From the IMG/VR virus record IMGVR_UViG_3300020147_000065, positions 1 to 64,000 of that record: DNA of 64,000 nucleotides. One strand, written 5' to 3'. A model generated the notes under the pieces. That model was not told where the DNA came from. It saw nothing but the letters and a program-made list of their open reading frames with translations, and ran no database searches. Positions 13,015-30,499 of this stretch are shown one piece after another (positions within the stretch are counted from its first letter, which is position 1; each line of letters begins with the position of its first letter). The position numbers and the translations under genes are program-made.

Positions 13015-13066
13015 TTAATGAGGTACCTCCGCGATTTTAAACGTATATGTTAGTACCCATGTTCCC

Positions 13067-13810
13067 CTAAACGTCTTTCCATGTTCGAAATTCCATAATA
13101 GACTGAATCGTGCTTCGTGCCACATTGAAGCGGTGGGCTAATTTACCGTAAGAAACAGTTCCTTTAAGGCCGCGAATTACCTGCACATCTTCGCGCGAGA
13201 GAATAGCTGCCGGTTTCTTTTCATTAAGAGTCTTACGAATAGCTTCTTTCTGCTGTTCTGATACTGCTCGACCCCGTCGCTGCTCTGACCATAGTTTCCT
13301 GGTTTCTGGGCTTGGTTTTCTTCCAAGATTATTAAGTCTCATTTGCTCAATATGCTGCGGTGAAAGTTTCCGACCTCTTAGAGGACTTGGGCGACCTTTC
13401 TGGGTCATACTTCTCTTTAAATTAGAGTCGGGTGTGGTGAAATTCAGAGCACCATATCTCTCTAACATAGTTCGATTTCTTTGGGCTATAGATTCGGGTG
13501 ATCTTTTTACTCCTAATGCAGTTGCTACAACTTCAACACAGATATTCAATTCAGGTTTAAGTTCGTTAACGTAAAATTGTTCTCTGTTAATTAAATCGTT
13601 TGTTTCTTCAAGTATAGAAAACTCAAACGCTTGTTCTCCGTACTTATTCCAAGAATTTTGTAATTTCTTGTTACAGTGGTTACCTTTTTTCAACGCATTG
13701 ATGTGTTGTTTCCATCGAATTTCTATTTGAATAGAACTACCAATGTAGAACTTACCATTGACCTTGTTCGTTATCTGGTATATTCCAGATTTGTGGATTT
13801 TATTACCCAT
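13067..13810 (-). CDS. free-standing GIY-YIG homing endonuclease with NUMOD3 repeats
   Basis: SGIYQITNKVNGKFYIGSS, HCNKKLQNSWNKYG, E..E..Y...LKPELN; NUMOD3-like SPQHIEQMR / SPETRKLWSE; AGGAG RBS before ATG 13810. Confidence 0.92.
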   Translation of the reverse strand: MGNKIHKSGIYQITNKVNGKFYIGSSIQIEIRWKQHINALKKGNHCNKKLQNSWNKYGEQAFEFSILEETNDLINREQFYVNELKPELNICVEVVATALGVKRSPESIAQRNRTMLERYGALNFTTPDSNLKRSMTQKGRPSPLRGRKLSPQHIEQMRLNNLGRKPSPETRKLWSEQRRGRAVSEQQKEAIRKTLNEKKPAAILSREDVQVIRGLKGTVSYGKLAHRFNVARSTIQSIMEFRTWKDV

Positions 13811-14795
13811 GACTTCTTCTCCTAATTCTAAACCAACATTTGGTATAATGTGCACCACATTCGGTGGTGCTCCATACGTACATCTTCAGTTGGCGATCCG
13901 CCGAAAATTTTTCGGAAAGGTCCCTATGGCGATTATAGATGATTGTTCCTATCAGAGTAAAATTTTGATGAAGCTCTGCGAACATTACGATGCCTATTTT
14001 CTTTCCGGTAACGAACGCCTCGGCCACCTGCAAGGCGACCTTCAGGCTCATCGTCTGGGCCTCGAATGGGCAAAATATCTCGGTTTGGAATACCTCGTAA
14101 AAATTTCCAGACGTTGTGTGCCCCTTTTTGACTGGACTGGTGCCTTTATAAAAACCGTTGAGGATACCGGACACCTTCCAACTTATGCGGGTACTGACAA
14201 TTATTTTATGTACCCACTACGCTCCGAATGCTGGGCCATGAATGTAGAGGAATGGTATCCAATTAAAGATGAAATTTTAGGTGTAGCAAAAGAAGCGGCT
14301 GAATATACTCTTCATCGTCATGCGGTCAGGCTCGGTAACATTGGCCCTGATTGGGGCCTCTGTGCTGAAAATCGTAGAGTGCGTAAAGAGGGAGTTCTGT
14401 GGCACGAAAATACTACTCTGGAAGAATACGCTGCCGCAGCAAATCAATTTGGTTTAAAATATACCGCAGAAGATTTCGATAATGTAAATGGTGGACTCGG
14501 ACTGGGAAATGAGAAATGGCGTCATTCGGTACCGGGAAGTGTGCTTCCGTGTCCAGGAAAAGAAACTCGCCCTGAACAAACTATTCGAAAATTAGAACAA
14601 AACAGAGTAGGACAGAATATTTCCGTACCAAAGGCTAAAAAATCTAAGCGAATTGAGACATGGCCACCAGTTAAAGAAAGGATTATCATTCCCAAATCAA
14701 CTCGTAGAGGGGAAGAAGCGCCTATTCCACAACCGCGTCCATCTACTGGTGCGACGGTCAAACCAATTAATACCGACTATATTCACGGTGACTAA
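13809..14795 (+). CDS. GT-A fold glycosyltransferase-like protein with low-complexity C-terminus
   Basis: N-terminal beta strand FGIMCTT, MAIIDDCS, GHLQGDL...GL, LVKISRR pattern. Confidence 0.55.
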   Translation: MTSSPNSKPTFGIMCTTFGGAPYVHLQLAIRRKFFGKVPMAIIDDCSYQSKILMKLCEHYDAYFLSGNERLGHLQGDLQAHRLGLEWAKYLGLEYLVKISRRCVPLFDWTGAFIKTVEDTGHLPTYAGTDNYFMYPLRSECWAMNVEEWYPIKDEILGVAKEAAEYTLHRHAVRLGNIGPDWGLCAENRRVRKEGVLWHENTTLEEYAAAANQFGLKYTAEDFDNVNGGLGLGNEKWRHSVPGSVLPCPGKETRPEQTIRKLEQNRVGQNISVPKAKKSKRIETWPPVKERIIIPKSTRRGEEAPIPQPRPSTGATVKPINTDYIHGD

Positions 14796-15616
14796 TGTTT
14801 TTTGTTACACAACCAATTTTTATTCCTGCGGCAGACAAAGCACAGAGGTATATTGATTCCATCACCTCATTAGGTGAATACATGCGAAAGTATTATCCAA
14901 CTGATCGCCGTATTAGCTTCGCCTTCGGAGGATGGTGTTTTGATGATGAATTTTGGGGAGTAGCAGCAGCCACCATTAAAGAGTACTTTCCTGATGCTCC
15001 CTGTGTTAGATATAAAGAAAATAAAGGTAAAGCAGTTATCATCAACGATCTTTCCAGACAGTTTCTTTATGATAATCCTTACCTTATCTCCGTGGATAGC
15101 GATATTTTATTTCCTTTCTACACACCATACATGTTTGATAGACTGGATATAATGTTTCAGATGTCTCAGAAGATAAGAAAAACACCACCTGGAGTGATAG
15201 GGCTTAAACAGGATGAGAATGGTGTTCACTATCAGTCTGTTTATAGTAATCAATATGAGTATGAGACGGCCATCCACGGGGTAAATTATCGTGAGAGGTT
15301 CGTGTGGCCCAATATCCGTGGAGGCATTGGTGGCGGATGCCTTTTAATCAACGCTGAGTTATGGAAGAAGATTGGTGGATACAGAGTAATGGGAGTTTAC
15401 TCGTCTGATGACGGTAAACTCCTGTTGGATGCTCGTAATAACGGTTATTCTATACAGGTTTCTGACTCCATTTCTATTATTCATCCCATAGAAGATGATC
15501 CGACTTATGGTGTATGGAAGCGTAGAGTGTGTCAGGCTACTACTCGAACTGGTGTGAAGGCTGATATTACACAACAAATTAAAGAAGCTGATGATTTTTG
15601 GGCACGTAGACGTTGA
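14795..15616 (+). CDS. GT2-like glycosyltransferase
   Basis: ENKGKAVIIN, LISVDSDI (DxD), GGGCLLINAELWKKIGGY, YSSDD. Confidence 0.75.
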   Translation: MFFVTQPIFIPAADKAQRYIDSITSLGEYMRKYYPTDRRISFAFGGWCFDDEFWGVAAATIKEYFPDAPCVRYKENKGKAVIINDLSRQFLYDNPYLISVDSDILFPFYTPYMFDRLDIMFQMSQKIRKTPPGVIGLKQDENGVHYQSVYSNQYEYETAIHGVNYRERFVWPNIRGGIGGGCLLINAELWKKIGGYRVMGVYSSDDGKLLLDARNNGYSIQVSDSISIIHPIEDDPTYGVWKRRVCQATTRTGVKADITQQIKEADDFWARRR

Positions 15617-15660
15617 CTTACGTGCTCATTTTTGTTATACTGTACGTGAGGTACACAAAC

Positions 15661-16434
15661 ATGATATTGATTGAAACAAACAACACCTTCTTTGCTGTGG
15701 CACATGAGGACGATGGGATTTTCAAACCAGATCGCCGCCCCATCATTTTAAATGAGCCTGGACCAACTGCAAAAGCTATCAAACATCTTAAAGATGCGGG
15801 AGCAGACTCTTATTTAAGCTCTACTGGTAAGTTTGGTAATAAAAACATACAAAAACCACAACCACCCTCTCCCTACAATGATGTCAGGGTTGGTGTGGAA
15901 GAAGAAAATCCAGATCAGCTACGTTTAAAACTTCTTGAAGAGAATCCTGGTATTAACTCTGACGCTGACTTTCTTCCTCACCCTGATGAATTACGTGCTC
16001 AGGCTCTTGATCTCGTTTTGAGTGGAATGGCGGCTGCAACCGGAACTCCTGTTGAACACGTAAGAGAAAACTTTAACAAAAGTCTCTACAGAAAAGATGA
16101 GAAGCAAAGTTTGATTGAGGCATCTGAAAGGATCGTCAACAAATTAAAGAATAATCCTGAAGAAGCCAGGAAATTCCTGACTTCTCTTCGACCAAAAGAG
16201 GCCCCTTACCGACCAAACAGAAAGCGTAAAGATTTACTGAAAGCTGGTCTTGCGGCTCCTGAATACATGAGTAAGCCTGTTTCTACATTTGCTACTCGTT
16301 TAGAGGGTTACCTACCACGGGGTATTTATATTACAGACCCAGAGGAAAAAGTCACCCATGAAGTGAGTGATGATGTGAAGTTAGCGAAAGCTGTTCTCGG
16401 ATTGAACTCAAAATATAAGGTGAGATTAGGATAA
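15661..16434 (+). CDS. hypothetical protein
   Basis: GAGG RBS before ATG 15661. Confidence 0.65.
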   Translation: MILIETNNTFFAVAHEDDGIFKPDRRPIILNEPGPTAKAIKHLKDAGADSYLSSTGKFGNKNIQKPQPPSPYNDVRVGVEEENPDQLRLKLLEENPGINSDADFLPHPDELRAQALDLVLSGMAAATGTPVEHVRENFNKSLYRKDEKQSLIEASERIVNKLKNNPEEARKFLTSLRPKEAPYRPNRKRKDLLKAGLAAPEYMSKPVSTFATRLEGYLPRGIYITDPEEKVTHEVSDDVKLAKAVLGLNSKYKVRLG

Positions 16435-16673
16435 TGCCGAAAACAATTGAATACAAATGTGAAGTTTGTGGAAAGAGAACGTCGGCCTTTGACCTTGAGG
16501 GTCAAGACTCGACGCAAATTTGGCTGCTCCTAACCGAAGAAGTTGTCATGCCTTATTATGAATATGCTGCTCCACCGATCAGAAAACGTCTGTCGGGTAT
16601 TTATTGCTCCCCAGCCTGTCTGGTTTCGTGTGTAGCACCGGAAATAAGGGTAGTTGATCTTGATGACAAGTAA
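16434..16673 (+). CDS. small CxxC...YCSxxC zinc-binding protein
   Basis: CEVC and YCSPAC. Confidence 0.6.
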   Translation: MPKTIEYKCEVCGKRTSAFDLEGQDSTQIWLLLTEEVVMPYYEYAAPPIRKRLSGIYCSPACLVSCVAPEIRVVDLDDK

Positions 16674-16884
16674 ATTTATAGTTATTTATCTTGATGATAC
16701 CTACTTCTGTGTGGCCACACAAAAAGAGTACATCGAGAGATTCGAAAAAGGACTGGGTGTTTATAAAAAGTCAGAACCAAACTCTGTTAATGCGAGACAC
16801 ATGAGAATGGCAATGGAATATTCTTCATGGATATGGAGATTGTTTTATACCGAGGCTTTACCATATAAAGGTTACTATTACTAA
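16654..16884 (+). CDS. hypothetical protein
   Basis: overlapping ORF. Confidence 0.5.
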   Translation: MILMTSKFIVIYLDDTYFCVATQKEYIERFEKGLGVYKKSEPNSVNARHMRMAMEYSSWIWRLFYTEALPYKGYYY

Positions 16885-16969
16885 GGAACTCGAAGGTAAG
16901 CTAAGCCTTCTTACTTTACGAACTATTCCCTTTGCCAAGAAGGGAGCTTTTATTTAGGAGAAAACAAAA

Positions 16970-17611
16970 ATGGCAAACAGAGTTTGGGTTGGTACTACGA
17001 GTACGGCCTATAATACCACAACCAACTGGCAGGGTGGAACAGTTCCCGTAAACGGTGATTCTGTAACTGTAGCGGCTGCGGCTGTCAACGACCTTGTTCT
17101 AAACCCAGGTACAGCATTATCCCTGGCTTCTATTGCTAACGAAGTCCCCGCTAACCCTATTCGTGGTTATAAGAAAGTACACCTTGGTAGCGATGCTTCT
17201 GGTGTTGCTTCTGTAGGTAAGGTAACCGTTACCGGAGACGCTAAGGCTAACTTTGGTAATGTATCAAACTTTGAAGTAGATGGTGATATGACCGCACCCG
17301 CCGAGGCTTCATTCCTCGACGGTAAGGTAGACGGTAAGCTAACTCTTGAAGTTATAGCTGATGTTTCTGAACTGACACTTGCAGAAGACCCTGATCTTAA
17401 TATCAAATCAACTGTTGGTGCCGGTGATGAACTTGAAGGTACAGTGTCTCTTGGAGAGGACGCTGTTAAACCAGGCTCTATTATCTCTGATGAGCGTCAG
17501 GCCATGCTTGATGCTATGGATGAGGGACTGGCCACAGGTAGTGTTCGGGGCACATTCCGCGTTGATCGTGGTAAAGTAGTCCCACGCAGCCAGTTCTTAA
17601 CATCACAATAA
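16970..17611 (+). CDS. putative virion surface protein with W-x-G...NW...VP...GD-x-V beta-helix starter motif
   Basis: MANRVWVGTTSTAYNTTTNWQGGTVPVNGDSVTV; strong AGGAG RBS; own terminator. Confidence 0.55.
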   Translation: MANRVWVGTTSTAYNTTTNWQGGTVPVNGDSVTVAAAAVNDLVLNPGTALSLASIANEVPANPIRGYKKVHLGSDASGVASVGKVTVTGDAKANFGNVSNFEVDGDMTAPAEASFLDGKVDGKLTLEVIADVSELTLAEDPDLNIKSTVGAGDELEGTVSLGEDAVKPGSIISDERQAMLDAMDEGLATGSVRGTFRVDRGKVVPRSQFLTSQ

Positions 17612-17628
17612 AAATTGGTATTGATAAT

Positions 17629-17662
17629 GAGGGGCAAGTCTTTTGGCTTGCCCCTCTTTTTT
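17629..17662 (+). terminator. intrinsic terminator
   Basis: GAGGGGCAAG / CTTGCCCCTC followed by T6. Confidence 0.85.
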
Positions 17663-17746
17663 GGGTACAAAAAGAATCTCGATGCATTTTGCTTCGTTAG
17701 GAAATACAGGATACCGACTAAACGGTACAACAAAGGAACAATAAAA

Positions 17747-18055: not shown

Positions 18056-18060
18056 AATAA

Positions 18061-20040
18061 ATGCCTGATGTAGCTTATGTTCCATTTTCCTTAGCGGAAC
18101 TTTCTGATGATGTTGAACTAACCCCGGTAGTTTCTACCGGGGATTTGTTGATGTTTGGATTAGAAGGTAAGTGGAGGAATCTGGAACATGGGCCTGAAGG
18201 TTATATTTTAACTTCCCACGGGGATAACGAAGAGCTTAGTTGGGAGCCTCCTGCTATCCCAACATCTTTAAACAACGGTGGCGGCAGTGTCGCTGTGAAC
18301 TTATCGGGTGCCATTACGCTGACTCCTGCGAGTGGGCAGCCCATTTCTCTCATCAATAACGATGTTGGTTTTTTTGTTGATGCTGACAATGAAATTCGCG
18401 TTATGAATGCGTCTCGAACAGGCTGGCGAAATCTCACGTTCGGCGGATTCTACGCATACAACAGTGCAACGGTCTCAGGTGGGTTTCGGGCAGGTCAGGC
18501 AGTCGTTGCCAACACGGCGTTATCCGTTACGCCTGGCGCTGTGCTTCACGTTGTCAACTCTGACGCTTCTCAGCCTGTCCTAAGGCTCGATTGCGCTCTT
18601 GGTCAAAGCGCGAATGCGTTCGAGGTGCGCGATAGTGACCGTGTAATTAAAGCCTCGATAGACGCAAGCGGCACGATAAGAGCAGCGCAGAGCGAGTTTG
18701 CTGGTGCAGCGACTTTGGGCTATTACGGAAGCACTGATTTTGCTAAATTCCAGCACGTCGGCGCGAACACGTATGGGCTATTGCAAGGCGTAGATGGCGC
18801 AACGTATCTCAACGCAGCGGCAGGGCGATCTATTCATTTTCGCATTGACAACTCGGAAAAAATGACGATGGACTCGAACGGCAACCTGAGCGCGGCGAGT
18901 GCAACGATAGGCGATAACACGTTAATGTTGGGCGGACAAGGCGGAGTTCAATTGATTGTCCGTAGGAGTTCTGCGGACATTGTTGCTTTCGGCAGAAACG
19001 CATTTCTTGCTCCATTTCTCGCTCTTGCCTCTAACGCGCTCGTTACGTGGGGAGGCACCGCCAACTCTGTTAATGCAATTCCTGACACGGATATTCATCG
19101 TGCTTCGGCTGGTGTTGTCGGTATTGGAGACGGTGCAGGAGGACTCGGCAACCTGAGCGCAGCGGGTGCGACGTTTAACACAGGTGGAAGCATAAAGATT
19201 GCCGGGTTGCCGGGTGTTGAATCATCGTATGGCGCATTGTGGATGGCCCAAGGCTCACCTTCTGGCTCTAATTACGCGCTGACAGGTAGTGCGAACGAAA
19301 CGATTTTGAACGCGACGAATATTATTTACCTGCGGCTCAATAATGGAATTAAAGGGACTCTTGACTCAACGGGATTGGCCCTAAGCGGCAACCTGAGCGC
19401 AAATCAGGGGAACTTTGGTGGCCTCATTCAGAATCAGAACGGAATCTATTGGAATAACTTTGCTGGTCTTGGGCTAACTACTACAGCCGGAGTGCCGGGA
19501 CGATTGATTCTGGAAAGTGCAACGGCAGCCGTTGCACTTGGAGGGATAACGGGCGCTTACCCAATGCTCAAGCGCAACGGCACCGGCATAGATTTCCGAC
19601 TGGCTGACGATTCGGCCTACGCCAATATCGCAGTGGCGGGGCTTGATGTTGAAGGCCGCTTCAATGACGAAATCAGTGTGCGTGGCACGGGTAAAATCCA
19701 TCATTCGGGTGGAGCTTTCTATATTGATGATGCGACGCATGATTTAGCTCTACAAGTTGGAAGCGTTGGAAGCGTTGGAATTGGTATATATAATCCGAGT
19801 GAGAAGTTGCACGTAGATGGAAATATATTATCTACGGGTGGAATTACTTCATCAACTAGAATTTCGATTTATAATGGTGGTATAGAACAAGCTTACTTTG
19901 ATGACAGCGGTAACTTGGGAATTACCGGCGCAATAAAATCTTCTCTTGCTGATTCAGCACCCGGTGATCCTACTGTTCCAGTTGCCTGGAAAGTCGAATA
20001 CGTTGATGGTGTTCCTTACAAACGCCCTTTATATCTTTAA
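18061..20040 (+). CDS. tail fibre-like protein, mosaic
   Basis: Gly/Ala/Asn-rich beta-fibre repeats, GIGIYNPSEKLHVDGNI motif typical of fibres; GC-richer internal segment. Confidence 0.7.
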   Translation: MPDVAYVPFSLAELSDDVELTPVVSTGDLLMFGLEGKWRNLEHGPEGYILTSHGDNEELSWEPPAIPTSLNNGGGSVAVNLSGAITLTPASGQPISLINNDVGFFVDADNEIRVMNASRTGWRNLTFGGFYAYNSATVSGGFRAGQAVVANTALSVTPGAVLHVVNSDASQPVLRLDCALGQSANAFEVRDSDRVIKASIDASGTIRAAQSEFAGAATLGYYGSTDFAKFQHVGANTYGLLQGVDGATYLNAAAGRSIHFRIDNSEKMTMDSNGNLSAASATIGDNTLMLGGQGGVQLIVRRSSADIVAFGRNAFLAPFLALASNALVTWGGTANSVNAIPDTDIHRASAGVVGIGDGAGGLGNLSAAGATFNTGGSIKIAGLPGVESSYGALWMAQGSPSGSNYALTGSANETILNATNIIYLRLNNGIKGTLDSTGLALSGNLSANQGNFGGLIQNQNGIYWNNFAGLGLTTTAGVPGRLILESATAAVALGGITGAYPMLKRNGTGIDFRLADDSAYANIAVAGLDVEGRFNDEISVRGTGKIHHSGGAFYIDDATHDLALQVGSVGSVGIGIYNPSEKLHVDGNILSTGGITSSTRISIYNGGIEQAYFDDSGNLGITGAIKSSLADSAPGDPTVPVAWKVEYVDGVPYKRPLYL

Positions 20041-20044
20041 TACC

Positions 20045-20761: not shown

Positions 20762-20764
20762 GAG

Positions 20765-22846: not shown

Positions 22847-22856
22847 GGTATTTATT

Positions 22857-23252
22857 ATGGCAAATGAACCCAATTTCGTAGCAACACCTCGTAACGCAAT
22901 AGCACAGGTTAGCGCGGCAAATACCGCTCGTGATGGCACGGGCACTGTTGTCACAGTTTTTACAGCGGGTGCCTCTGGTTCTCGTATAGATCGCATTACC
23001 ATCGAGGCTGTGGCAACAACAACGGCAGGAATGATTCGTCTTTTTGTTAATGACGGTAGTAATTCCCGTTTATGGCGTGAAGTATCTGTTTCAGCGATTA
23101 CGCCCAGTGGAACGGTGGCAACTTTTACAACTGAAATCAACAGTAGTAATAGTGCTTTACCTTTGCTTATTTTACCAAATGGCTACTCGTTACGTGCCTC
23201 AACACATAACGCGGAGACATTTAATATTATAGCAGAGGGTGGAGATTTTTAA
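22857..23252 (+). CDS. putative small virion beta-sandwich protein
   Basis: Thr/Ala-rich, beta-strand pattern, in fibre operon. Confidence 0.55.
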   Translation: MANEPNFVATPRNAIAQVSAANTARDGTGTVVTVFTAGASGSRIDRITIEAVATTTAGMIRLFVNDGSNSRLWREVSVSAITPSGTVATFTTEINSSNSALPLLILPNGYSLRASTHNAETFNIIAEGGDF

Positions 23253-23977
23253 TGAGCAACGGGCTTTTTGGTTTTCCCAGTGGAGCGGCAACTCAAAACA
23301 GAGGTTTTACTAAACCTACCGCGGGTAGTCGTCTGAATCCATCACACAGCTTGGCTTCTGGATTAAGAGCACGTTACCTTTTTAATGAATCGGGTGTAGT
23401 AATTCAGGATTATTCGGCCAACTGTTATCATCTTACACTTTCTGGTGACTGGAAAAGAGTTCAAACTCCAGAAGGTATGGCTGTTAACTTTATTAAAGCG
23501 ACCGGTAAAAAAGGTAATGCGTTCGTTGCAAGTAATCTTGGTATCACCAACACCTTTACGTTGTGGTGTCGCTTCAAAGTAACCGCATTAAATGCGGCTG
23601 GTGCGTTAATGAAACTCGGAGCTAATAATGATGGAATCGGATTTGGTATTGGGGACACCACAATGGATGCAGCAGGTAATAAATTAGTTGCACTTGCTGA
23701 AAATGTAGTGTGGCATCCAACGACCGTGACCATTACTACGGAGTATTTAAATATCGCCCTTACAGCCAACACAATTTATAACCGCGATGTTATAGCTAAA
23801 ACCAGTGTTTATTTTTCTAATCCCGGCAACCTGTTTAGTGTCGGTGGATACACTGCGATTGGTGCAGTAGAACGTTACCTTGATTGCATTGTTCAATCCG
23901 TGGGCGTATGGAACAGAGCTTTAACGGCAAATGAATTGGGGTTATTAGAGAACAACCCATATTGTGATTTTGCATAA
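23252..23977 (+). CDS. LamG/concanavalin A-like lectin domain protein
   Basis: YLFNESG, FTLWCRFK, VGVWNRALTANEL (LamG_3 C-terminal signature). Confidence 0.75.
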   Translation: MSNGLFGFPSGAATQNRGFTKPTAGSRLNPSHSLASGLRARYLFNESGVVIQDYSANCYHLTLSGDWKRVQTPEGMAVNFIKATGKKGNAFVASNLGITNTFTLWCRFKVTALNAAGALMKLGANNDGIGFGIGDTTMDAAGNKLVALAENVVWHPTTVTITTEYLNIALTANTIYNRDVIAKTSVYFSNPGNLFSVGGYTAIGAVERYLDCIVQSVGVWNRALTANELGLLENNPYCDFA

Positions 23978-23999
23978 GACTCACGCAGGAGAATGTTAA

Positions 24000-25130
24000 A
24001 TGGCAAACAGTGTATTACCGGGATTAGCATATCAAGGACCACAGGGTGTTCAGGGTGTTCAGGGTGTTCAGGGAGCACAAGGATACCAGGGAGCACAAGG
24101 ATACCAGGGAGCTACCGGATCAGGTGCTCAGGGACCGCAAGGTGTTCAGGGACCACAGGGGGCTGACGGCGGCGGTGGAGGCGGAAGTGGTAGTGGTGAC
24201 AGCCTTACCATTAATGTCTCACAGACAGCCCACGGTTTTGCTGTTGGTGATCTTGTAAGACACAACGGAACAACTTATGTAAAAGCACAGGCTGACAGTG
24301 CAACAAATGCTAACGTCGCAGGTATGGTTAAAACTGTAACCGACGCTAATAACTTTGTACTTACATTGCCCGGCTCTTATATAACTGGTTTGTCTGGTCT
24401 GACAGCAGGAGAGACATACTTTCTCTCACCGTCATCTGCCGGAGCGATGACGGCTACCGAGCCTTCAACAACTGGACAGATAAGAAAAGTTGTTCTCATT
24501 GCGACCAGCACAACAGCCGGTATTCTTCAATCAGACATTGGCTTTTTGTTACAAACAGCAGTAGCTTATGAGACCACGGTTGCTCCCGGTAAATTTAGAA
24601 CCAGTGGTGCCGTAGTTCAGTTTGGTATTCCCGGCAGAAGTCCAGCGGCGGCGGCTACAACTTTTGCTTTCACAGCCAACCGAATTTATTATGAACCAAT
24701 TATGGTAGAAGATACCATAACACTTGATAGAATTATCGCTGAGGTTACAACATTAATTACATCTTCCACAATTCGTCTTGGTATTTACAATGCTGACGAA
24801 AACTGGCAGCCCACTACTCTTGTATTAGATGCTGGAACCATTGATTCTGCCACCACGGGAGTAAAGACAATTACAATCAACCAGATTCTAACTCGTGGAC
24901 GTTATCTACTTGCGTTGCATAGTGGACATGCACCAACTGTTCGAGCATTGTTGATGGCTGGTTCAATTACTGGACCAATTGCCCCCGCTGTGGGTACTAA
25001 CTCCAATATAGTTCAACTATATAAAGCAAGTCAGGCGTATGCTGCTTATGCTTCCAGTGGAGTTCAATGGGATACAGCAGTGGCAGCCAACACAGCATTT
25101 AGACATGCGGCAATGTTGAGGTGGACATAA
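24000..25130 (+). CDS. collagen-like fibre protein
   Basis: short GXY tract followed by a domain paralogous to the C-terminus of 20765..22846. Confidence 0.85.
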   Translation: MANSVLPGLAYQGPQGVQGVQGVQGAQGYQGAQGYQGATGSGAQGPQGVQGPQGADGGGGGGSGSGDSLTINVSQTAHGFAVGDLVRHNGTTYVKAQADSATNANVAGMVKTVTDANNFVLTLPGSYITGLSGLTAGETYFLSPSSAGAMTATEPSTTGQIRKVVLIATSTTAGILQSDIGFLLQTAVAYETTVAPGKFRTSGAVVQFGIPGRSPAAAATTFAFTANRIYYEPIMVEDTITLDRIIAEVTTLITSSTIRLGIYNADENWQPTTLVLDAGTIDSATTGVKTITINQILTRGRYLLALHSGHAPTVRALLMAGSITGPIAPAVGTNSNIVQLYKASQAYAAYASSGVQWDTAVAANTAFRHAAMLRWT

Positions 25131-25438
25131 TGAATAAGAGATACAACGAAGAGTATGGAATTGGAGGATTTAATCCTTCTCTTCCTGATAATAATCTTGT
25201 GAGTAGGGAAGAAATTCCCTACTCATGGGAGGAAATTCGAGAATTAAGAGAGCCACTTCTTGTGGAAGCGGATATTCTTATTAATCGTGCAACTGATTTG
25301 TCACTCACCGCGGGTAATGTGAATGCAGATTATCTGAAAGCTTTAAGCGAATATCGCATGGCCCTAAGAGACATCACAAAAACATACGAAAATCCCAACG
25401 ATGTTGAGTGGCCCGTTAAGCCGGAGGTAATAGTTTAA
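25130..25438 (+). CDS. phage tail fibre assembly chaperone
   Basis: WEEIRELREPLL.EAD...EYRMALRDIT...VEWPVKP signature; TAATG coupling. Confidence 0.8.
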   Translation: MNKRYNEEYGIGGFNPSLPDNNLVSREEIPYSWEEIRELREPLLVEADILINRATDLSLTAGNVNADYLKALSEYRMALRDITKTYENPNDVEWPVKPEVIV

Positions 25439-26289
25439 TGGCAACTACCGCACTAACACAATCAAATATACGCGGACCACAGGGAACACAAGGCTTTCAG
25501 GGTAATCAGGGAACACAAGGTGTGCAAGGCACCCAAGGATTTCAAGGTAACCAAGGATTTCAAGGATTCCAAGGTAACCAAGGCACTCAGGGAGTGCAGG
25601 GACCACAACCTTCTTTAAACGGCACCTCTACTACTTCCATATTAATGGGTAACGGCACGAAAGTGTTCACAACTCAAGCTAACCTTGCATGGAGTAATGG
25701 ATATAGAATTCGAGTATCACAAACTTCTGATCCATCAGCAAACTACATGGAAGGAGTTGTCTCTTCTTATTCCGATACAACATTAACTGTTACAATAGAT
25801 TATGTTGTAGGAAGCGGAACACTAAGTGATTGGAGCTTTGCTCTTGCGGGAGAAAGAGGCGCTCAGGGAGCAGCCGGAGCAACAGGAGCACAGGGAAGTG
25901 GAGGAGCAGGAACAATGTCTCGTGCAAGCGTAGTTGTTACAACGGCTTCACTTGCTGATCTTGCTACTGAAAATGCTGCGCCCACAATTGCAAAGACCGC
26001 ACTATTACTTTCCGTCCAAACTGATCGTGCGGCATGGGTAAGAGTTTATAATTCGGCGGCGGCTCGGACAGCCGACGCCTCACGTTCAATTGCTGACGAC
26101 CCCGTGGCAAGCAGTGGAGTAGTAGCTGAAATAATTACCACCGGAGCCGAGACAATCAATCTTGCACCACCATATGAAATTTATAGCGCAGAGGCGGTCC
26201 CCTCTGCTAATCTATCTGTCGCTATTCAGAACAGAAGTGGTAGCACATCAACGGTCCAAGTAACATTCACCTATCTGGTATTGGAGTAA
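25438..26289 (+). CDS. collagen-like fibre protein
   Basis: GTQ/GFQ/GNQ tract; STTSILMGNGTKVFTTQ...YMEGVVSSYS...W fibre domain. Confidence 0.85.
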   Translation: MATTALTQSNIRGPQGTQGFQGNQGTQGVQGTQGFQGNQGFQGFQGNQGTQGVQGPQPSLNGTSTTSILMGNGTKVFTTQANLAWSNGYRIRVSQTSDPSANYMEGVVSSYSDTTLTVTIDYVVGSGTLSDWSFALAGERGAQGAAGATGAQGSGGAGTMSRASVVVTTASLADLATENAAPTIAKTALLLSVQTDRAAWVRVYNSAAARTADASRSIADDPVASSGVVAEIITTGAETINLAPPYEIYSAEAVPSANLSVAIQNRSGSTSTVQVTFTYLVLE

Positions 26290-26290
26290 A

Positions 26291-27181
26291 ATGGCAACAG
26301 CAAGTAATACACTCAACCTGGGTATCTCCACCGACGCGGCGTTTCGTGCTTGGGCATCTGTCATATCTACTCGTCTTGGGGATATGGGACTTGTGAAGTT
26401 AGTTATCTCTGGTGAGATTGATATGGGTACAGTTACTAAACCAAACCCAAGCACAAGTAACTGGCCGTATGATGGTTTTGAGTCTAAGGGTTTTCAAATC
26501 TGGAGACTCGATGATGCTTTACAAGCAGCATATCCTGTGTATTTAAAAATTGAATATGGTGGTCAGCAAATCAACACTCCCTGGTGGACTGAATATGGTG
26601 CCGCTCTTAGACTTACATTAGGTAGAGGTTACAGTGGAACAGATTTAACAAATGCAACTGCAAGTAAGGTCGTTTATAGTTATCCCCATGCATCAACTGA
26701 ATGTCGTTTTAGCGGCTCGACTTCTCGATTTGCAGCATTAATCGGTAATATATTTTTCGCATTCGAAAGAATAAAAGATTATGCTGGAAATGATACAGGT
26801 ATCGGAGCCTCAATCATAGGGGATAGTTATCATGCCGTGGATGGCTCCACAGTATATGGCATAGATTACAAATGGCAGATGACTCTATTAAGCTCCGGTA
26901 GTAATCCACCAACCGAAAGTCGGTGGGGAGTTTTGCTTCCAACTACTGCCGATGGTGTGATAAACACAGAGAGTCATGGTTACACTGTCCATCCTTTTAC
27001 ACCGAGACAAGAACACGCATTATTAAATGCGCTTGTCTTCTTTACTGGTAACCTTGTTTCTGGAACTGAATATGATATTTCTGTGTCGGGTAAGAGTAGA
27101 CATTATTTGTTCGTAGGAGAACATAATTATATTACTACTATACGACCAACTGAAGTATCGCTTGCAATGCGCTGGGAGTAA
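26291..27181 (+). CDS. putative virion protein
   Basis: in fibre operon; aromatic-rich beta pattern. Confidence 0.55.
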   Translation: MATASNTLNLGISTDAAFRAWASVISTRLGDMGLVKLVISGEIDMGTVTKPNPSTSNWPYDGFESKGFQIWRLDDALQAAYPVYLKIEYGGQQINTPWWTEYGAALRLTLGRGYSGTDLTNATASKVVYSYPHASTECRFSGSTSRFAALIGNIFFAFERIKDYAGNDTGIGASIIGDSYHAVDGSTVYGIDYKWQMTLLSSGSNPPTESRWGVLLPTTADGVINTESHGYTVHPFTPRQEHALLNALVFFTGNLVSGTEYDISVSGKSRHYLFVGEHNYITTIRPTEVSLAMRWE

Positions 27182-27183
27182 CT

Positions 27184-27927
27184 ATGATTCCATATATTTT
27201 TAATTTTATTCATCTGGGCGACAAGAAACTTAGCCTCGAAAAAAGAGCTTACATCCAAAGTTTTAAAGACACTAATCCTAATGCAGAGATAAAGGTGTGG
27301 TCTAATGCTGATGTTCAAGCTCTTACATTGCCTGAATCATTCTATAAAGAAGAAGATTTCCGTGCGAAGAGTGACGTTCTTCGTTATTGGATTTTAGCCA
27401 ACCACGGGGGAATCTATTGCGACACGGACGTAATCTCTTTAAATTCATGGGAAGAATGGCTTCAAGGCAAAGAAGTTTTTGTAGCCCAGTATGATGTCGG
27501 ACGACTTGCACTTACCAATGCTATCATGGGTGCAGCTCCGGGTAACGCATTCTTTCCAAAACTTGTTGATATGCTACCCGGTGCTGAAGTAATCTTTCGT
27601 AATGGTGGTTATCTACAGAGAGTCGGTTCTCATTTGATTGACCTTTTGCTTGCTACTGGTAAATACCCCGAAGTCCATCGAATTGAACCGGACAAAACTT
27701 GTTCGTTGACACTTGCAGAAAGAGCCAAGGGTGTTATACCAAATCTCATTAAACTCAAGGAAGAAGGCGCTCTTTGCGTTCACCTTTGGGCAACTGCCGG
27801 AGATCAACCAAGTATAGCTAAAACCTATCCTGCTCTGGCAAATGCTATGTTAAATGCTTTGGGTCATGACCACATATTCTTTGGTGAAGACCCAGACCTT
27901 CTACCAGAACCAAGGAACAATAAATGA
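27184..27927 (+). CDS. GT32-like (DxD, Gly_transf_sug) glycosyltransferase
   Basis: IFNFIHLG, KSDVLRYWILANHGGIYCDTDV, TNAIMGAAPGNAFF, VHLW. Confidence 0.88.
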   Translation: MIPYIFNFIHLGDKKLSLEKRAYIQSFKDTNPNAEIKVWSNADVQALTLPESFYKEEDFRAKSDVLRYWILANHGGIYCDTDVISLNSWEEWLQGKEVFVAQYDVGRLALTNAIMGAAPGNAFFPKLVDMLPGAEVIFRNGGYLQRVGSHLIDLLLATGKYPEVHRIEPDKTCSLTLAERAKGVIPNLIKLKEEGALCVHLWATAGDQPSIAKTYPALANAMLNALGHDHIFFGEDPDLLPEPRNNK

Positions 27928-28331
27928 ATGTTAATGTAACCTTTCAGAACACACAAGCATCATATGAGTGGCCGGGTTTTACATGGAGACTTAATAGAGT
28001 CACAGGCTCCAGTTGTGAAGGTTACACCACTGAGGTCGCTGCCACCAGTACTACTCCCAACGGTTTCGCAGTAACATTACCCTCTGGTCTTGCTGCCGCA
28101 GACCACGGTACTACTCAGGTTGCTGTGGTTACCCCGCCAACTTCGGGTGATATTAACTACTATTATTTCCTTGAAGTATGGGCAGCTATTGATTCTGGTT
28201 ATGGTGATCCAAACTATGATCGCTGGATGAACAGTGCATCACCTTTTCAAGTACTCGTTCTTGATAGTGTTGATGCCGGAATGAGGACACGACCAATGAG
28301 AGGTGCTGTCTGGCCTCGTAATATACGTTGA
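27924..28331 (+). CDS. hypothetical protein
   Basis: coupled ORF. Confidence 0.6.
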   Translation: MNVNVTFQNTQASYEWPGFTWRLNRVTGSSCEGYTTEVAATSTTPNGFAVTLPSGLAAADHGTTQVAVVTPPTSGDINYYYFLEVWAAIDSGYGDPNYDRWMNSASPFQVLVLDSVDAGMRTRPMRGAVWPRNIR

Positions 28332-28356
28332 CGAAATGAGGAATTTGTGCTATACT
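28328..28356 (+). promoter_or_regulatory. sigma70-type promoter
   Basis: TTGACG-17-TATACT. Confidence 0.7.
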
Positions 28357-28386
28357 AATTCCTCATTCCATTTTGATCGGAGTCTT

Positions 28387-29652
28387 ATGTTGTTTTCTAT
28401 TTTTACCCCCACTAATCGCCCGGACTATCTTCTTGAACTATATGAAAGTCTTTTAGCACAAAAGTACACCAACTGGGAGTGGATTATTGTTCCCAACGGT
28501 GGTTGTCGTATTCCTGATGTGATTCTGGAGAATAAGAAAGTTATTGTGCGTGAACCAGGCGTACCAAATTCTAATATCGGTGCTCTAAAGAGATTTGCGT
28601 GTTCCCTTGCCTCTGGAGACATTCTCGTTGAGGTAGATCATGATGACATGCTTTTACCAAACTGTTTGGATGAATTAAATTACTGGTTCAATAGACCGGA
28701 AAATTATGGTTTTGTCTATTCAGACAATTTAGTTCTCTCTGATAACTTTATACCATTTAATTCCGCATTTGGTTGGACACATGATAAAATTACCCTAAAT
28801 GATTACAAACAGGGTAGTGGATTAACTTCAACGGAATGCATTCGAATGCATTCCTTCGAGCCATCCGCGGCATCAATGGCTTTTATATGGTATGCTCCCG
28901 ACCACGTAAGAGCTTGGAGAAAAAACGTATATTGGCAGATTGGTGGACATAATGCTGAGATGGATGTATTAGACGATCATGAATTGTTGATACGTACTTA
29001 TTTGCATACTCCGATGGCCAAGACAATGAATCCTCTCTACATCTACCGGCATACGGGTCACAACACATCAATGAGTTCTGAAAAGAATGCAAAGATACAG
29101 AAAGGTACTGTTGAATTATTTCACACCTACGGGTTTGATCTCGTACAACGCGAAGCCGATCTCCGCGGTTTGAGAAAGCTTGATCTTGGTGGTGGATTTA
29201 ATGCCCCAAGAGGCTACGAAACAGTTGATCTCGTTAATGGAGACATTACATGCGACCTGAATGAGCCTTGGCCGTTTGAAGATGGTAGTGTTGGAGTTCT
29301 ACGTGCCCATCATATCTTCGAGCATCTAAAGAATCCTTTATTCACAATGCAGGAAGCACATAGAGTACTTGCAGATGGTGGTTGGTTAATGGTTGAAGTG
29401 CCATCCACGGATGGTAGGGGAGCATGGTGTGATCCCACGCATGTTTCTTACTGGAATCAGGTAAGTTTTTTCTACTATACTCGTGCTGAACAAGCGGGGT
29501 ATATTTATAATGATACCGCCAAATTTCAGGAATTCAGATTGGAAACGCGTTATCCAAACCCCTATTTCGAAGCCAATCACATTCCATGCGTAACATTTTG
29601 GGGTAGAGCAATAAAATCTAATGAGCGACGACCTCATTTAATTCAGGTGTAA
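28387..29652 (+). CDS. GT2 glycosyltransferase fused to class I SAM methyltransferase-like domain
   Basis: FSIFTPT, WEWIIV, LVEVDHDD (DxD-like), DDHELLIR; C-terminal LDLGGG, HIFEHL, AHRVLADGG, DPTH. Confidence 0.85.
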   Translation: MLFSIFTPTNRPDYLLELYESLLAQKYTNWEWIIVPNGGCRIPDVILENKKVIVREPGVPNSNIGALKRFACSLASGDILVEVDHDDMLLPNCLDELNYWFNRPENYGFVYSDNLVLSDNFIPFNSAFGWTHDKITLNDYKQGSGLTSTECIRMHSFEPSAASMAFIWYAPDHVRAWRKNVYWQIGGHNAEMDVLDDHELLIRTYLHTPMAKTMNPLYIYRHTGHNTSMSSEKNAKIQKGTVELFHTYGFDLVQREADLRGLRKLDLGGGFNAPRGYETVDLVNGDITCDLNEPWPFEDGSVGVLRAHHIFEHLKNPLFTMQEAHRVLADGGWLMVEVPSTDGRGAWCDPTHVSYWNQVSFFYYTRAEQAGYIYNDTAKFQEFRLETRYPNPYFEANHIPCVTFWGRAIKSNERRPHLIQV

Positions 29653-29654
29653 GC

Positions 29655-30497: not shown

Positions 30498-30499
30498 CG

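What the first reader, a model, noticed from the sequence alone, without database searches (positions are those of the whole stretch)
13809..29652. Glycosyltransferases interleaved with collagen fibres and a lectin domain: putative virion glycosylation/decoration system
Seen: two GT-A-like genes (13809-15616) precede the fibre module. A GT32-like gene (27184) and a GT2-methyltransferase fusion (28387) sit within the same gene run as three Gly-X-Y proteins, a LamG domain and a fibre chaperone. The collagens are rich in Thr/Ser/Gln and lack the Pro-rich Y positions. Established: bacterial and giant-virus collagen-like proteins can be glycosylated. Inference: the phage builds methylated glycans on its fibres or capsid (camouflage, stability, adhesion). 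DNA or host-surface glycosylation is the alternative.
Basis: partly seen in the sequence, partly recalled or inferred. Interest (0 to 1): 0.66.

Follow-up and report, generated by a model that had tools for sequence, protein, structure and literature searches.

The report
Glycosyltransferases inside a phage fibre operon
A 221-kb soil phage carries four real sugar-adding enzymes, one fused to a methyltransferase, next to or inside its collagen-like tail-fibre operon; this fits sugar-coated fibres but does not prove them, and similar gene arrangements have been described in aquatic phages.

Summary
The window is the first 64 kb of a 221,108-bp virus record from a soil metagenome.

**What is there**
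- 13809-14795 and 14795-15616 are GT-A-fold glycosyltransferases, shown only by structure prediction (no Pfam match).
- 27184-27927 is GT32-like. 28387-29652 is a GT2 plus class-I SAM methyltransferase fusion.
- The only three Gly-X-Y proteins of the genome lie between them, with a fibre chaperone and a sub-threshold LamG-like protein.
- All four enzymes lack hydrophobic segments long enough to span a membrane.

- The GT32-like and GT2-MT genes sit in a tightly packed gene run with the fibres.
- A second GT/methyltransferase cluster at 109-114 kb lies between two adhesin-like giant proteins.
- The GT2-MT family has at least 2,419 members. A collagen-like gene lies within 10 kb in 29 of 83 viral loci, against 1 of 70 loci for GT32-like genes.
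- In the only cultured carrier, Synechococcus phage S-CRM01, the gene lies far from the fibres.
- The other three GT families show no link to fibres in relatives.
- No known entry enzyme for DNA glycosylation was found.

Virion-protein glycosylation is the best reading (about 0.4). Host-envelope remodelling, the published reading of similar regions, remains a serious rival.

The parts
13809..14795 (+). GT-A-fold glycosyltransferase-like protein (328 aa) with a disordered, K/R/P-rich C-terminal tail of about 90 aa. K98-x-S100-R-R stands where GT2 enzymes have DxD.
   Evidence: 462 homologues. AF2 model plus Foldseek hits are all GT-A. 4 of 37 family members touch PF00535 weakly. Invariant residues.
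14795..15616 (+). GT-A-fold, GT2-like glycosyltransferase (273 aa) with an invariant D101-S-D103 motif.
   Evidence: Alignment A1. AF2 pLDDT 94.6. Foldseek PDB hits are TarS, TarP, GlfT2 and SpsA. BFVD hits are viral GT-A proteins.
15599..15628 (+). Terminator-like hairpin with a T run that closes the first GT pair.
   Evidence: 11 pairs, then TTTTTGTTAT. This is a consensus match only.
16970..17611 (+). 213-aa protein of unknown family at the head of the fibre module, followed by a strong terminator-like hairpin at 17629-17656.
   Evidence: No family hit. Hairpin.
18061..20040 (+). 659-aa fibre-like protein without Gly-X-Y. It shares its N-terminal ~50 residues with the collagen fibre.
   Evidence: BLASTP 42% over 52 aa to 20765-22846. 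No family hit.
20765..22846 (+). Main collagen-like tail fibre (693 aa, 145 Gly-X-Y triplets in five runs, Gln-rich Y position, globular C-terminal domain).
   Evidence: PF01391 E 1.8e-63. Tail-fibre PHROGs. Composition.
22857..23252 (+). 131-aa protein of unknown function. Homologues occur in the L015 locus type (L015/L017, same ORF cluster), where a collagen-like gene lies within the same 10-kb flank.
   Evidence: BLASTP 48% over 77 aa to L015 4068-4487. Collagen-like gene in L015/L017.
23252..23977 (+). LamG/concanavalin-like protein (241 aa), tentative.
   Evidence: PF13385 E 0.0048, below the cut-off, covering model positions 12-150 of 151. No support from PDB sequences or BLASTP to the L004 LamG.
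24000..25130 (+). Second fibre protein (376 aa) with 16 N-terminal Gly-X-Y triplets. It shares a 150-aa domain with the main fibre.
   Evidence: BLASTP 51% over 150 aa.
25121..25438 (+). Tail-fibre assembly chaperone (105 aa).
   Evidence: PF16778 E 1.8e-9, above the cut-off. Tail-fibre-assembly PHROGs.
25438..26289 (+). Third collagen-like protein (283 aa, 22 triplets).
   Evidence: PF01391 E 1.6e-9..
26291..27181 (+). 296-aa phage-specific protein, probably a structural partner of the fibres (inference).
   Evidence: Atlas look-alikes are Uroviricota hypothetical proteins, some carrying discoidin domains. No Pfam or PHROG hit.
27184..27927 (+). GT32-like glycosyltransferase (247 aa) with the SDVLRY...GGIYCDTD motif. 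It has two paralogues at 110-111.5 kb of the genome.
   Evidence: PF04488 E 2.4e-12. Paralogues.
27924..28331 (+). 135-aa protein of unknown function between the two GT genes.
   Evidence: ORF only; no family hit.
28387..29652 (+). GT2 glycosyltransferase fused to a class-I SAM methyltransferase (421 aa). It belongs to a large phage family.
   Evidence: PF00535, PF08241 and PF13489. At least 2,419 homologues at about 50% identity. Invariant DHDD (D84, H85, D86, D87) and a conserved DLGGG (G269 invariant; D266 and G268 at 90% or more). Profile matches to K4CP, TarS and GalT1.
29655..30497 (+). 280-aa protein with a sub-threshold CarboxypepD_reg-like (Ig-like) domain; last gene of the run before the strand switch.
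   Evidence: PF13620 E 9.5e-7, 29.5 bits against a 32.3-bit cut-off.

Best explanation
Phage-encoded glycosylation of virion-surface proteins.

**Proposed mechanism**
- The GT32-like enzyme (27184) and the GT2-methyltransferase fusion (28387) are soluble cytoplasmic enzymes made together with the fibre proteins.
- They use host nucleotide sugars, because the phage record encodes no Epimerase- or NTP_transferase-family enzyme.
- They build a short O-linked glycan on fibre or fibre-associated proteins before assembly. The fused SAM methyltransferase O-methylates a sugar of that glycan, as the third domain of chlorovirus PBCV-1 A064R does.
- The second cluster at 109-114 kb would do the same for the two adhesin-like giant proteins beside it.
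- The upstream pair (13809-15616) is a separate transcription unit. Its membership of the system is uncertain.

**Shown:** the folds and motifs of the enzymes, the gene order, the absence of predicted membrane-spanning segments, and the synteny statistics.

**Inferred:** late co-expression, the protein acceptor, the O-linkage and the sugar methylation.
For: - **Gene packing.** From 24000 to 30497 the genes abut or overlap by 1-4 nt, except one 55-nt gap before 28387. No strong terminator-like site lies between 20765 and 30497.
- **Catalytic motifs intact.** DTD in the GT32-like protein; DHDD and DLGGG in the GT2-MT.
- **Solubility.** No 19-residue window reaches a Kyte-Doolittle mean of 1.6 in any of the four window GTs. 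The maximum is 1.02.
- **Within-genome replicate.** A 1,873-aa VWA giant, an MptE-like plus methyltransferase protein, a GT2, two GT32-like genes, a 315-aa protein and a 1,812-aa FN3 giant all lie on one strand at 103.9-119.5 kb.
- **Relatives.** L004 reads LamG, 121 aa, collagen, GT2-MT. In L010 the collagen gene is the called gene directly before the GT2-MT. In L009 and L021 four giant collagen-like ORFs lie directly upstream.
- **Counts for the GT2-MT family.**
  - 29 of 83 loci have a Gly-X-Y gene within 10 kb.
  - After dereplication at 75% identity, 16 of 37 clusters do.
  - Where at least 8 kb of upstream flank is held, 15 of 34 loci have one upstream.
  - By gene position, there are 38 occurrences at -1 to -7 and 6 at +1 to +7.
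- **Control.** There are 52 Gly-X-Y genes in 1.14 Mb around GT2-MT genes, against 3 in 1.01 Mb around GT32-like genes.
- **Genome-level co-occurrence.** 5 of 5 GT2-MT genomes without a nearby collagen gene have collagen-like genes elsewhere.
- **Cross-habitat conservation.** About 50% identity links a soil jumbo phage with aquatic T4-like phages. This fits a phage-borne acceptor better than a host-specific envelope glycan (inference).
- **Precedents.** PBCV-1 A064R is a GT-GT-MT fusion that builds and methylates the capsid glycan (PMC9614988). Mycobacteriophage virion glycosylation was reported by Freeman et al. 2023, as cited in PMC12619734.
Against: - There is no direct evidence of any glycan.
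- In S-CRM01, the only cultured phage with the GT2-MT (49% identity), the gene lies among psbA, hli, nrdAB, phoH and td, about 50 kb from its collagen-like genes.
- 54 of 83 loci have no collagen-like gene within the flank held.
- The other three GT families show no fibre linkage: 1 of 11, 0 of 10 and 1 of 70 loci.
- The synteny control comes from other phage types, and the loci are not independent.
- A sigma-70-like site (28328-28356) lies directly before the GT2-MT gene. Promoter-like sites are no more frequent than chance, so this is only a caution.
- Tail-fibre regions of large phages are known dumping grounds for accessory genes (PMC7029224).
Confidence: 0.4

Rival explanations
1. Host-envelope remodelling. 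The GTs act at the inner face of the membrane on lipid-linked or cytoplasmic precursors of host LPS, O-antigen, exopolysaccharide or teichoic-type polymers. This would change the cell surface during infection, giving superinfection exclusion or keeping progeny from sticking to debris. They sit among fibre genes only because that region tolerates accessory genes.
For: - This is the published reading for GTs in the tail-fibre hypervariable region of pelagimyophages and cyanomyophages (PMC7029224; PMC12801897).
- The closest solved relatives of the GT2 domain are polysaccharide and teichoic-acid enzymes: K4CP, TarS, SpsA and heparosan synthase. NCBIfam gives weak WcaA and TuaG hits.
- S-CRM01 keeps the gene among auxiliary metabolic genes.
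- Relatives of 14795 head islands of 8-10 GT genes with sugar-modifying enzymes, which looks like polysaccharide assembly.
Against: - No flippase, polymerase, Gtr-type or other membrane component was found. None of the four window GTs and none of the three recognisable GTs of the second cluster (two GT32-like, one GT2) has a predicted membrane helix.
- The genes are packed into the fibre run.
- The GT2-MT keeps about 50% identity across phages of very different habitats, whose hosts would have different envelope glycans.
- Collagen-like genes are enriched upstream of the GT2-MT.
Confidence: 0.27
2. DNA hypermodification. The GTs add sugars to a hydroxylated base in phage DNA to escape restriction.
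For: - Phage GT-A enzymes related to LPS and teichoic-acid enzymes do glycosylate 5hmC, and such clusters can lie near structural genes (bioRxiv 10.1101/2023.12.21.572611).
- DNA is an acceptor common to all hosts, which would also explain the cross-habitat conservation.
- 11% of the genome is estimated to be missing.
Against: - The 221-kb record has no thymidylate-synthase-family gene. That family supplies the hydroxymethylases and the 5-hydroxy-dCMP synthase of PMC13326640.
- It has no C5 DNA methyltransferase and no 2OG-FeII_Oxy_3 or 2OG-FeII_Oxy_5 match.
- Tet_JBP and DUF6445 searches also found nothing, but their controls found nothing anywhere, so they are uninformative.
- The fused methyltransferase matches Methyltransf_11 and Methyltransf_23, not PF00145.
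Confidence: 0.1
3. Unrelated accessory genes. The four GTs do not form one system. They were acquired separately, act on different and unknown acceptors (small molecules, glycolipids, host proteins), and their position next to the fibres has no functional meaning.
For: - Each of the four families has a different distribution and different neighbours elsewhere.
- The first pair is a separate unit with its own terminator-like hairpin.
- The 13809 family lacks DxD and may not be a classical metal-dependent GT.
Against: - The combination GT32-like, GT2 and methyltransferase occurs twice in this genome, each time beside large surface-type proteins.
- The GT2-MT/collagen linkage recurs in 16 of 37 lineages.
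Confidence: 0.18

Closest known systems
Mycobacteriophage virion glycosylation (Che8, Corndog, Myrna; Freeman et al. 2023, Cell Host Microbe, known here only through citations in PMC12619734 and PMC12801897)
   Same: A tailed phage encodes its own soluble glycosyltransferases, which are proposed here, and shown there, to decorate virion proteins.
   Different: There the acceptors are the C-termini of the capsid and tail-tube subunits. Here the candidates are collagen-like fibres and adhesin-like giant proteins. No sequence relation was tested, and the original paper is not in the library.
Chlorovirus PBCV-1 A064R (GT-GT-methyltransferase fusion acting on the major capsid protein glycan; PMC9614988)
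   Same: A virus-encoded GT-A domain is fused to a C-terminal class-I SAM methyltransferase. In PBCV-1 this pair adds a sugar and then 2-O-methylates the terminal sugar of a virion protein glycan.
   Different: No sequence similarity was detectable; A064R domain 1 is not among the PDB hits. A064R has two GT domains and acts on an N-glycan of a eukaryotic virus.
GT genes in the tail-fibre hypervariable region of pelagimyophages and cyanomyophages (Zaragoza-Solas et al. 2020, PMC7029224)
   Same: The anatomy is the same: several GT genes interleaved with tail-fibre genes that carry collagen repeats and concanavalin-like domains. The GT2-MT family found here is abundant in such T4-like phages.
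   Different: This phage is not T4-like by the genes compared and comes from soil. The authors read the GTs as host O-chain modifiers, not virion decorators.
Collagen-like glycoproteins: mimivirus L230 substrate (PMC9614988) and Bacillus BclA (from my own knowledge)
   Same: Gly-X-Y proteins on a particle surface, encoded near glycosyltransferases.
   Different: L230 needs Lys in the repeats and a lysyl-hydroxylase domain. Here the repeats have no Lys, and none of the three 2OG-oxygenase families whose search had a working control was detected. BclA is glycosylated on Thr of GPT repeats. Here Thr fills only 18 of 145 Y positions.
Phage DNA glycosylation (T4 alpha/beta-GT; TET-associated GTs; arabinosyl-5hoC of RB69)
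   Same: Phage-encoded glycosyltransferases using host nucleotide sugars.
   Different: The upstream enzymes that create the hydroxyl acceptor were not found in this record.

Membership tests
GT2 glycosyltransferases (Pfam PF00535, GT-A fold), for 28387-29652 N-domain | Match to the family model above its curated cut-off | tested here: met
   36.9 bits against a 23.3-bit cut-off. The family profile hits K4CP at E 3.3e-14, and also TarS, GalT1 and SpsA.
GT2 glycosyltransferases (Pfam PF00535, GT-A fold), for 28387-29652 N-domain | Acidic DxD-type metal/nucleotide-binding motif conserved | tested here: met
   D84-H85-D86-D87 are invariant in 35 sequences.
Class-I SAM methyltransferases, for 28387-29652 C-domain | Family model above cut-off and a glycine-rich SAM-binding motif | tested here: met
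   PF08241 scores 30.3 bits against 21.2; PF13489 scores 28 against 27. The DLGGG motif is conserved: G269 is invariant, and D266 and G268 are at 90% or more.
GT32 / Gly_transf_sug (PF04488), for 27184-27927 | Family model above cut-off with the DXD sugar-binding region | tested here: met
   47.8 bits against a 23-bit cut-off. SD.LR and GG..D.D are invariant in the three paralogues.
GT-A-fold glycosyltransferases, for 14795-15616 | GT-A fold and DxD motif | tested here: met
   AF2 pLDDT 94.6. 451 PDB matches at E 0.001 or better; every match in the printed list (best 50 ranks) is a glycosyltransferase. D101-S-D103 is invariant.
GT-A-fold glycosyltransferases, for 13809-14795 | GT-A fold | tested here: met
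   Core pLDDT above 90. The Foldseek top hits are GT-A enzymes, with one cytidylyltransferase at rank 11.
GT-A-fold glycosyltransferases, for 13809-14795 | DxD motif | tested here: not met
   K98-x-S100-R101-R102 occupies that strand end and is invariant or nearly so in 37 homologues. The protein is therefore filed as GT-A-like only. A metal-independent GT or a nucleotidyltransferase remains possible.
Collagen triple-helix repeat proteins (PF01391) | Long uninterrupted Gly-X-Y runs and a model match above cut-off | tested here: met
   210.6 bits for 20765-22846 and 37.8 bits for 25438-26289. There are 145, 16 and 22 triplets. 24000-25130 is supported by repeat count and PHROGs only.
Laminin_G_3 / concanavalin-like lectin, for 23252-23977 | Model match above the curated cut-off | tested here: inconclusive
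   17.5 bits against a 27.6-bit cut-off, E 0.0048, but covering 139 of 151 model positions. No support.
Phage virion glycosylation system (mycobacteriophage type) | Glycan covalently attached to virion structural proteins | not testable with these tools
   This needs glycoproteomics or glycoprotein staining of virions.
Phage virion glycosylation system (mycobacteriophage type) | Phage-encoded soluble GTs linked to structural genes | tested here: met
   Gene order, hydropathy and the second cluster.
DNA sugar hypermodification clusters | An enzyme that makes the hydroxylated base: a ThyA homologue, or a C5 methyltransferase plus a TET-like oxygenase | tested here: not met
   No PF00303 match and no PF00145 match, both with working controls. 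The Tet_JBP search found nothing but its control also found nothing. The record is estimated 89% complete.
Gtr-type O-antigen seroconversion modules | Membrane-embedded flippase and transferase components | tested here: not met
   No segment reaches Kyte-Doolittle 1.6 in any of the four window GTs or in the GT32-like and GT2 proteins of the second cluster. Only that cluster's MptE-like/methyltransferase protein touches 1.62. This is a crude test and no dedicated predictor was available.
Mimivirus L230-type collagen hydroxylysine glycosylation | Lys in Gly-X-Y repeats and a 2OG-dependent lysyl hydroxylase | tested here: not met
   No Lys in 183 triplets. No PF13640 or PF13759 match.

The most novel reading that the evidence does not exclude
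The GT2-methyltransferase fusion family is a dedicated modification enzyme of phage collagen-like fibres. The family has at least 2,419 members at about 50% identity, spread over cyanophages, other aquatic T4-like phages and this soil jumbo phage. On this reading it adds a sugar to Gly-X-Y fibres and methyl-caps it. In many relatives it would work with the neighbouring P4H-like 2OG oxygenases, UDP-galactopyranose mutase and sulfotransferases. That would be a widespread, undescribed post-translational 'collagen maturation' pathway in tailed phages.
Probability: 0.2. Interest if true: 0.72.

Novelty: new variant of a known kind. Interest (0 to 1): 0.45.

Why it matters
Glycans on tail fibres would change how we think about host recognition, particle stability, and the immune or grazer visibility of environmental phages. 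They would also affect heterologous production of fibres for phage engineering, because an unglycosylated fibre might not behave like the native one.

The useful product of this work is a testable handle. One conserved enzyme family, the GT2-MT fusion, shows a measurable though incomplete linkage to collagen-like genes. It also has a cultured carrier, Synechococcus phage S-CRM01. The long-standing question of what GTs in phage fibre regions act on (virion, host surface or DNA) can therefore be put to a direct experiment.

If the host-surface reading is right instead, the finding is an ordinary case of a described pattern.

Tried and rejected
- **No close relatives.**
  - Megablast of 13000-31000 against GenBank phages found no match.
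  - Single-protein scans of IMG/VR for 14795 and 27184 found no relative.
  - tblastn of 14795 and 13809 against cultured phages found no match.
- **First search for 13809.** The word-based homologue search found only the protein itself. The exhaustive HMMER search then found 462 homologues.
- **Short or failed look-ups.**
  - Context look-ups for P0017 and P0002 returned contigs too short to be informative.
  - Alignment A2 was too divergent for a locus scan. A smaller alignment, A5, worked.
- **No added information.**
  - NCBIfam added nothing decisive.
  - The PDB sequence search for the MptE-like protein of the second cluster found nothing.
- **LamG check.** BLASTP of the window LamG-like protein and of the 131-aa protein against the L004 counterparts showed no similarity. 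The positional analogy with L004 therefore rests on domain type, not homology.
- **Uninformative absences.** The Tet_JBP and DUF6445 searches of the genome are uninformative, because their controls found nothing anywhere.
- **Sequencing runs.** Only two soil DNA runs hold the stretch, one of them probably the source. There is no RNA run, so expression could not be examined and read laying was not used.
- **Toxin reading rejected.** The GT32-like genes are not toxin-like. The weak TcdA/TcdB and SetA similarity covers only the shared DXD sugar-binding region of small 196-247-aa proteins.
- **Genetic code.** No code other than table 11 was needed.

Full report
**Setting.** The window is bases 1-64000 of a single 221,108-bp IMG/VR virus record, estimated 89% complete. 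The only sequencing runs that hold the stretch are soil metagenomes. No GenBank phage matches the region at the DNA level. By the genes compared, the phage is not a T4-like phage, although it shares one enzyme with many of them.

**Check of the observation.** ORF listing and family scans show an uninterrupted plus-strand run from 16970 to 30497. It ends at a strand switch.

The run contains these genes:
- a 659-aa fibre-like protein (18061-20040)
- the main collagen-like fibre (20765-22846; PF01391 E 1.8e-63; 145 Gly-X-Y triplets)
- a 131-aa protein
- a sub-threshold LamG-like protein (23252-23977; E 0.0048, 17.5 bits against a 27.6-bit cut-off)
- a second fibre with 16 triplets (24000-25130)
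- a tail-fibre assembly chaperone (25121-25438; PF16778 E 1.8e-9)
- a third collagen-like protein (25438-26289)
- a 296-aa phage-specific protein
- the GT32-like gene (27184-27927; PF04488 E 2.4e-12)
- a 135-aa ORF
- the GT2-methyltransferase fusion (28387-29652; PF00535, PF08241, PF13489)
- a 280-aa protein with a sub-threshold Ig-like CarboxypepD_reg match

The fibres are paralogous modules. 18061 and 20765 share an N-terminal ~50 residues, and 20765 and 24000 share a 150-aa domain at 51% identity. These three are the only Gly-X-Y proteins in the whole 221 kb. Their Y position is mostly Gln (89 of 145 in the main fibre). Pro sits almost only at X. Thr is 18 of 145 at each position, and Lys is absent.

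**The two upstream 'GT-A-like' genes.**
- *14795-15616.* I found 15 homologues. The alignment shows an invariant DSD and GT2-like NxGKA and GGC motifs. The AF2 model has pLDDT 94.6. Foldseek returned 451 PDB matches at E 0.001 or better, and the printed best matches are all glycosyltransferases, led by TarS, GlfT2, TarP and SpsA. Viral GT-A proteins match as well.
- *13809-14795.* The word-indexed search failed, but the exhaustive search found 462 homologues covering residues ~7-225. This also shows that 13809 is a better start than the later one on record. The model is confident over the domain and again matches GT-A enzymes. This family carries an invariant K-x-S-R-R where GT2 enzymes have DxD, so I call it GT-A-like and leave its chemistry open. 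Its last ~90 residues are a disordered basic tail.

This pair ends at a terminator-like hairpin (15599-15628). It is separated from the fibre module by about 1.4 kb of small ORFs. It precedes the module rather than being interleaved with it.

**Other evidence within the genome.**
- A second cluster lies on the minus strand at 103.9-119.5 kb. In order it holds a 1,873-aa protein with a VWA domain, a 450-aa protein with weak MptE-like (Maf-type) and Methyltransf_24 matches, a GT2, two GT32-like paralogues of 27184, a 315-aa protein, and a 1,812-aa protein with FN3 domains. The same enzyme set (GT32-like, GT2, methyltransferase) therefore occurs twice, each time packed against large surface-type proteins.
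- None of the four window GTs, and neither the GT32-like nor the GT2 proteins of the second cluster, has a hydrophobic stretch fit to span a membrane.
- The record has no Epimerase or NTP_transferase gene, so any sugars come from the host pool.
- It has no thymidylate-synthase-family gene, no C5 DNA methyltransferase, and no 2OG-FeII_Oxy_3 or 2OG-FeII_Oxy_5 match. These include the known makers of the hydroxylated bases that DNA glycosyltransferases need (PMC13326640).
- The Tet_JBP and DUF6445 searches were uninformative, because their controls found nothing anywhere.

| GT family | Loci examined | Loci with a Gly-X-Y gene within 10 kb |
|---|---|---|
| 14795 family | 10 | 0 |
| 13809 family | 11 | 1 |
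| GT32-like | 70 | 1 |
| GT2-MT | 83 | 29 |

- The 14795 family lies at or near the head of runs of GT-sized genes in large phages. Where annotation is available (L005, L007), these are islands of 8-10 GT genes (GT29, Glyco_transf_7C, GT10, GT2, NodZ-like) with DegT- or NTP_transferase-type sugar enzymes, beside replication genes in L005.
- The 13809 family sits alone in huge phages.
- The GT2-MT fusion behaves differently. It is a very large, well-conserved phage family, with at least 2,419 proteins at about 50% identity and more than 576 viral loci.
- After dereplication at 75% identity, 16 of 37 GT2-MT clusters have a Gly-X-Y neighbour. Where at least 8 kb of upstream flank is held, 15 of 34 loci have one upstream.
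- The collagen-like genes lie almost always upstream and mostly on the same strand as the GT2-MT gene: 38 occurrences at gene positions -1 to -7, against 6 at +1 to +7.
- The density is 4.6 Gly-X-Y genes per 100 kb around the GT2-MT, against 0.3 in the GT32 control set.
- Individual cases are striking. L004 reads BNR, LamG (strong), 121 aa, collagen, GT2-MT. In L010 the collagen gene is the called gene directly upstream. L009 and L021 have four giant collagen-like ORFs in a row before the GT2-MT, followed by DUF6445, a P4H-like oxygenase and more GTs, and in L009 the tail sheath.
- Frequent neighbours across the family are DUF6445, 2OG-FeII_Oxy_3, GT2+TPR, UDP-galactopyranose mutase and sulfotransferase. 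Beyond these come either the T4 neck genes gp13/gp15, or ThyX, PhoH and RNR.
- The counter-example matters. In the only cultured carrier, Synechococcus phage S-CRM01, g90 lies among psbA, hli, nrdAB, td and phoH, about 50 kb from its three collagen-like ORFs.
- All five tested genomes without a nearby collagen gene do have such genes elsewhere. Collagen-like genes are common in such phages, so this is weak evidence.

**Weighing the explanations.**
- *For the virion reading:* the packing of two GTs into the fibre run, the replicate cluster beside adhesin-like giant proteins, the soluble nature of the enzymes, the recurrent GT2-MT/collagen linkage, and the conservation of the GT2-MT across phages of unrelated habitats. 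A phage-borne acceptor would be constant across habitats, and a host envelope glycan would not. PBCV-1 A064R gives a worked precedent for a viral GT-methyltransferase fusion that extends and methyl-caps a virion protein glycan (PMC9614988). Mycobacteriophages give a precedent in tailed phages.
- *Against:* there is no chemistry, the linkage is incomplete, S-CRM01 is a counter-example, and the synteny control is not phylogenetically matched. Fibre regions are known to be plastic, and GTs there have been noted before and read as host O-chain modifiers (PMC7029224).
- *Estimates:* virion-protein glycosylation about 0.40, host-envelope remodelling about 0.27, unrelated accessory genes about 0.18, and DNA glycosylation about 0.10.
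The hydroxylysine route of mimivirus L230 is excluded here, because the repeats have no Lys and no oxygenase was found. Thr of the repeats, the globular fibre domains or the 296-aa and 280-aa neighbours are equally possible.

**Novelty and score.** The individual elements are known: phage GTs in fibre regions, virion glycosylation in mycobacteriophages and giant viruses, and glycosylated collagen-like surface proteins. I found no description in the searched literature of three things:
- a quantified linkage between one conserved GT2-methyltransferase family and collagen-like fibre genes across many phage lineages
- its presence in a soil jumbo phage
- the doubled GT/methyltransferase-beside-adhesin layout

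I rate this as a new variant of a known kind, with interest 0.45.

- No genetic code other than table 11 was used.
- The weak Pfam similarity of the GT32-like proteins to the glycosyltransferase domain of large clostridial toxins covers only the common DXD region of small phage enzymes. It was described only, and nothing was altered.

Noticed in passing
G000:C1 103928-119511 (outside the window; locus L008): A second glycosylation-type cluster on the minus strand. It holds two GT32-like genes, a GT2, and a 450-aa protein with weak MptE-like (Maf-type) and Methyltransf_24 matches. They lie between a 1,873-aa VWA-domain protein and a 1,812-aa FN3-domain protein.
   Followed up: partly
window 13809-14795 and its 462 homologues: A large, mostly viral GT-A-fold family without a Pfam model. 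An invariant K-x-S-R-R replaces the DxD motif. It may be a metal-independent transferase or another nucleotide-dependent enzyme.
   Followed up: partly
window 13067-13858 (-): A GIY-YIG endonuclease gene (PF01541 E 1.8e-11). As listed from its GTG start, its 5' end overlaps the first 50 nt of the GT-A gene at 13809. It may be a homing endonuclease inserted next to the GT pair.
   Followed up: no
window 52959-54530 (+): A PAS-PAS-SpoIIE (PP2C phosphatase) protein of 523 aa in a phage genome. This is a sensory phosphatase architecture typical of bacterial signalling.
   Followed up: no
window 48992-49987 (-): A metallo-beta-lactamase-fold protein matching the anti-Pycsar Apyc1 family (E 6.3e-31). 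It is a likely counter-defence cyclic-nucleotide phosphodiesterase.
   Followed up: no
window 61394-62323 (+): A ThyX-like protein (309 aa) that matches only positions 59-190 of the 191-position Thy1 model (E 1.5e-8). The record has no ThyA-family gene.
   Followed up: no
window 33205-33939 (-): An R2K-clade ATP-grasp protein (PF18299 E 3.6e-26) just downstream of the fibre module, on the opposite strand.
   Followed up: no
L005 10001-20849; L007 2966-11773; L093 9992-18869: Relatives of 14795-15616 open runs of GT-sized genes in T4-like and jumbo phages. In L005 and L007, where annotation is available, these are 8-10 glycosyltransferase genes (GT29, Glyco_transf_7C, GT10, GT2, NodZ-like) plus sugar-modifying enzymes; L093 has the same gene layout as L007. 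In L005 they lie next to topoisomerase and clamp-loader genes. The product of these islands is unknown.
   Followed up: partly
L009 1-18509; L021 upstream of 10001: In some aquatic T4-like phages four giant collagen-like ORFs in a row (about 350-1,100 aa in the two loci) directly precede the GT2-MT. In L009 the next genes are DUF6445, a P4H-like 2OG oxygenase, a methyltransferase-GT1 fusion, a GT1 and a GT9, just before the tail sheath gene. This looks like a collagen modification island.
   Followed up: partly
window 17629-17656 and 20116-20144 (+): Two strong terminator-like hairpins (12-13 pairs, 8 G-C). The first follows the 213-aa gene 16970-17611, which may mark it as a highly expressed structural gene. 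The second lies inside the coding region that starts at 20045.
   Followed up: no
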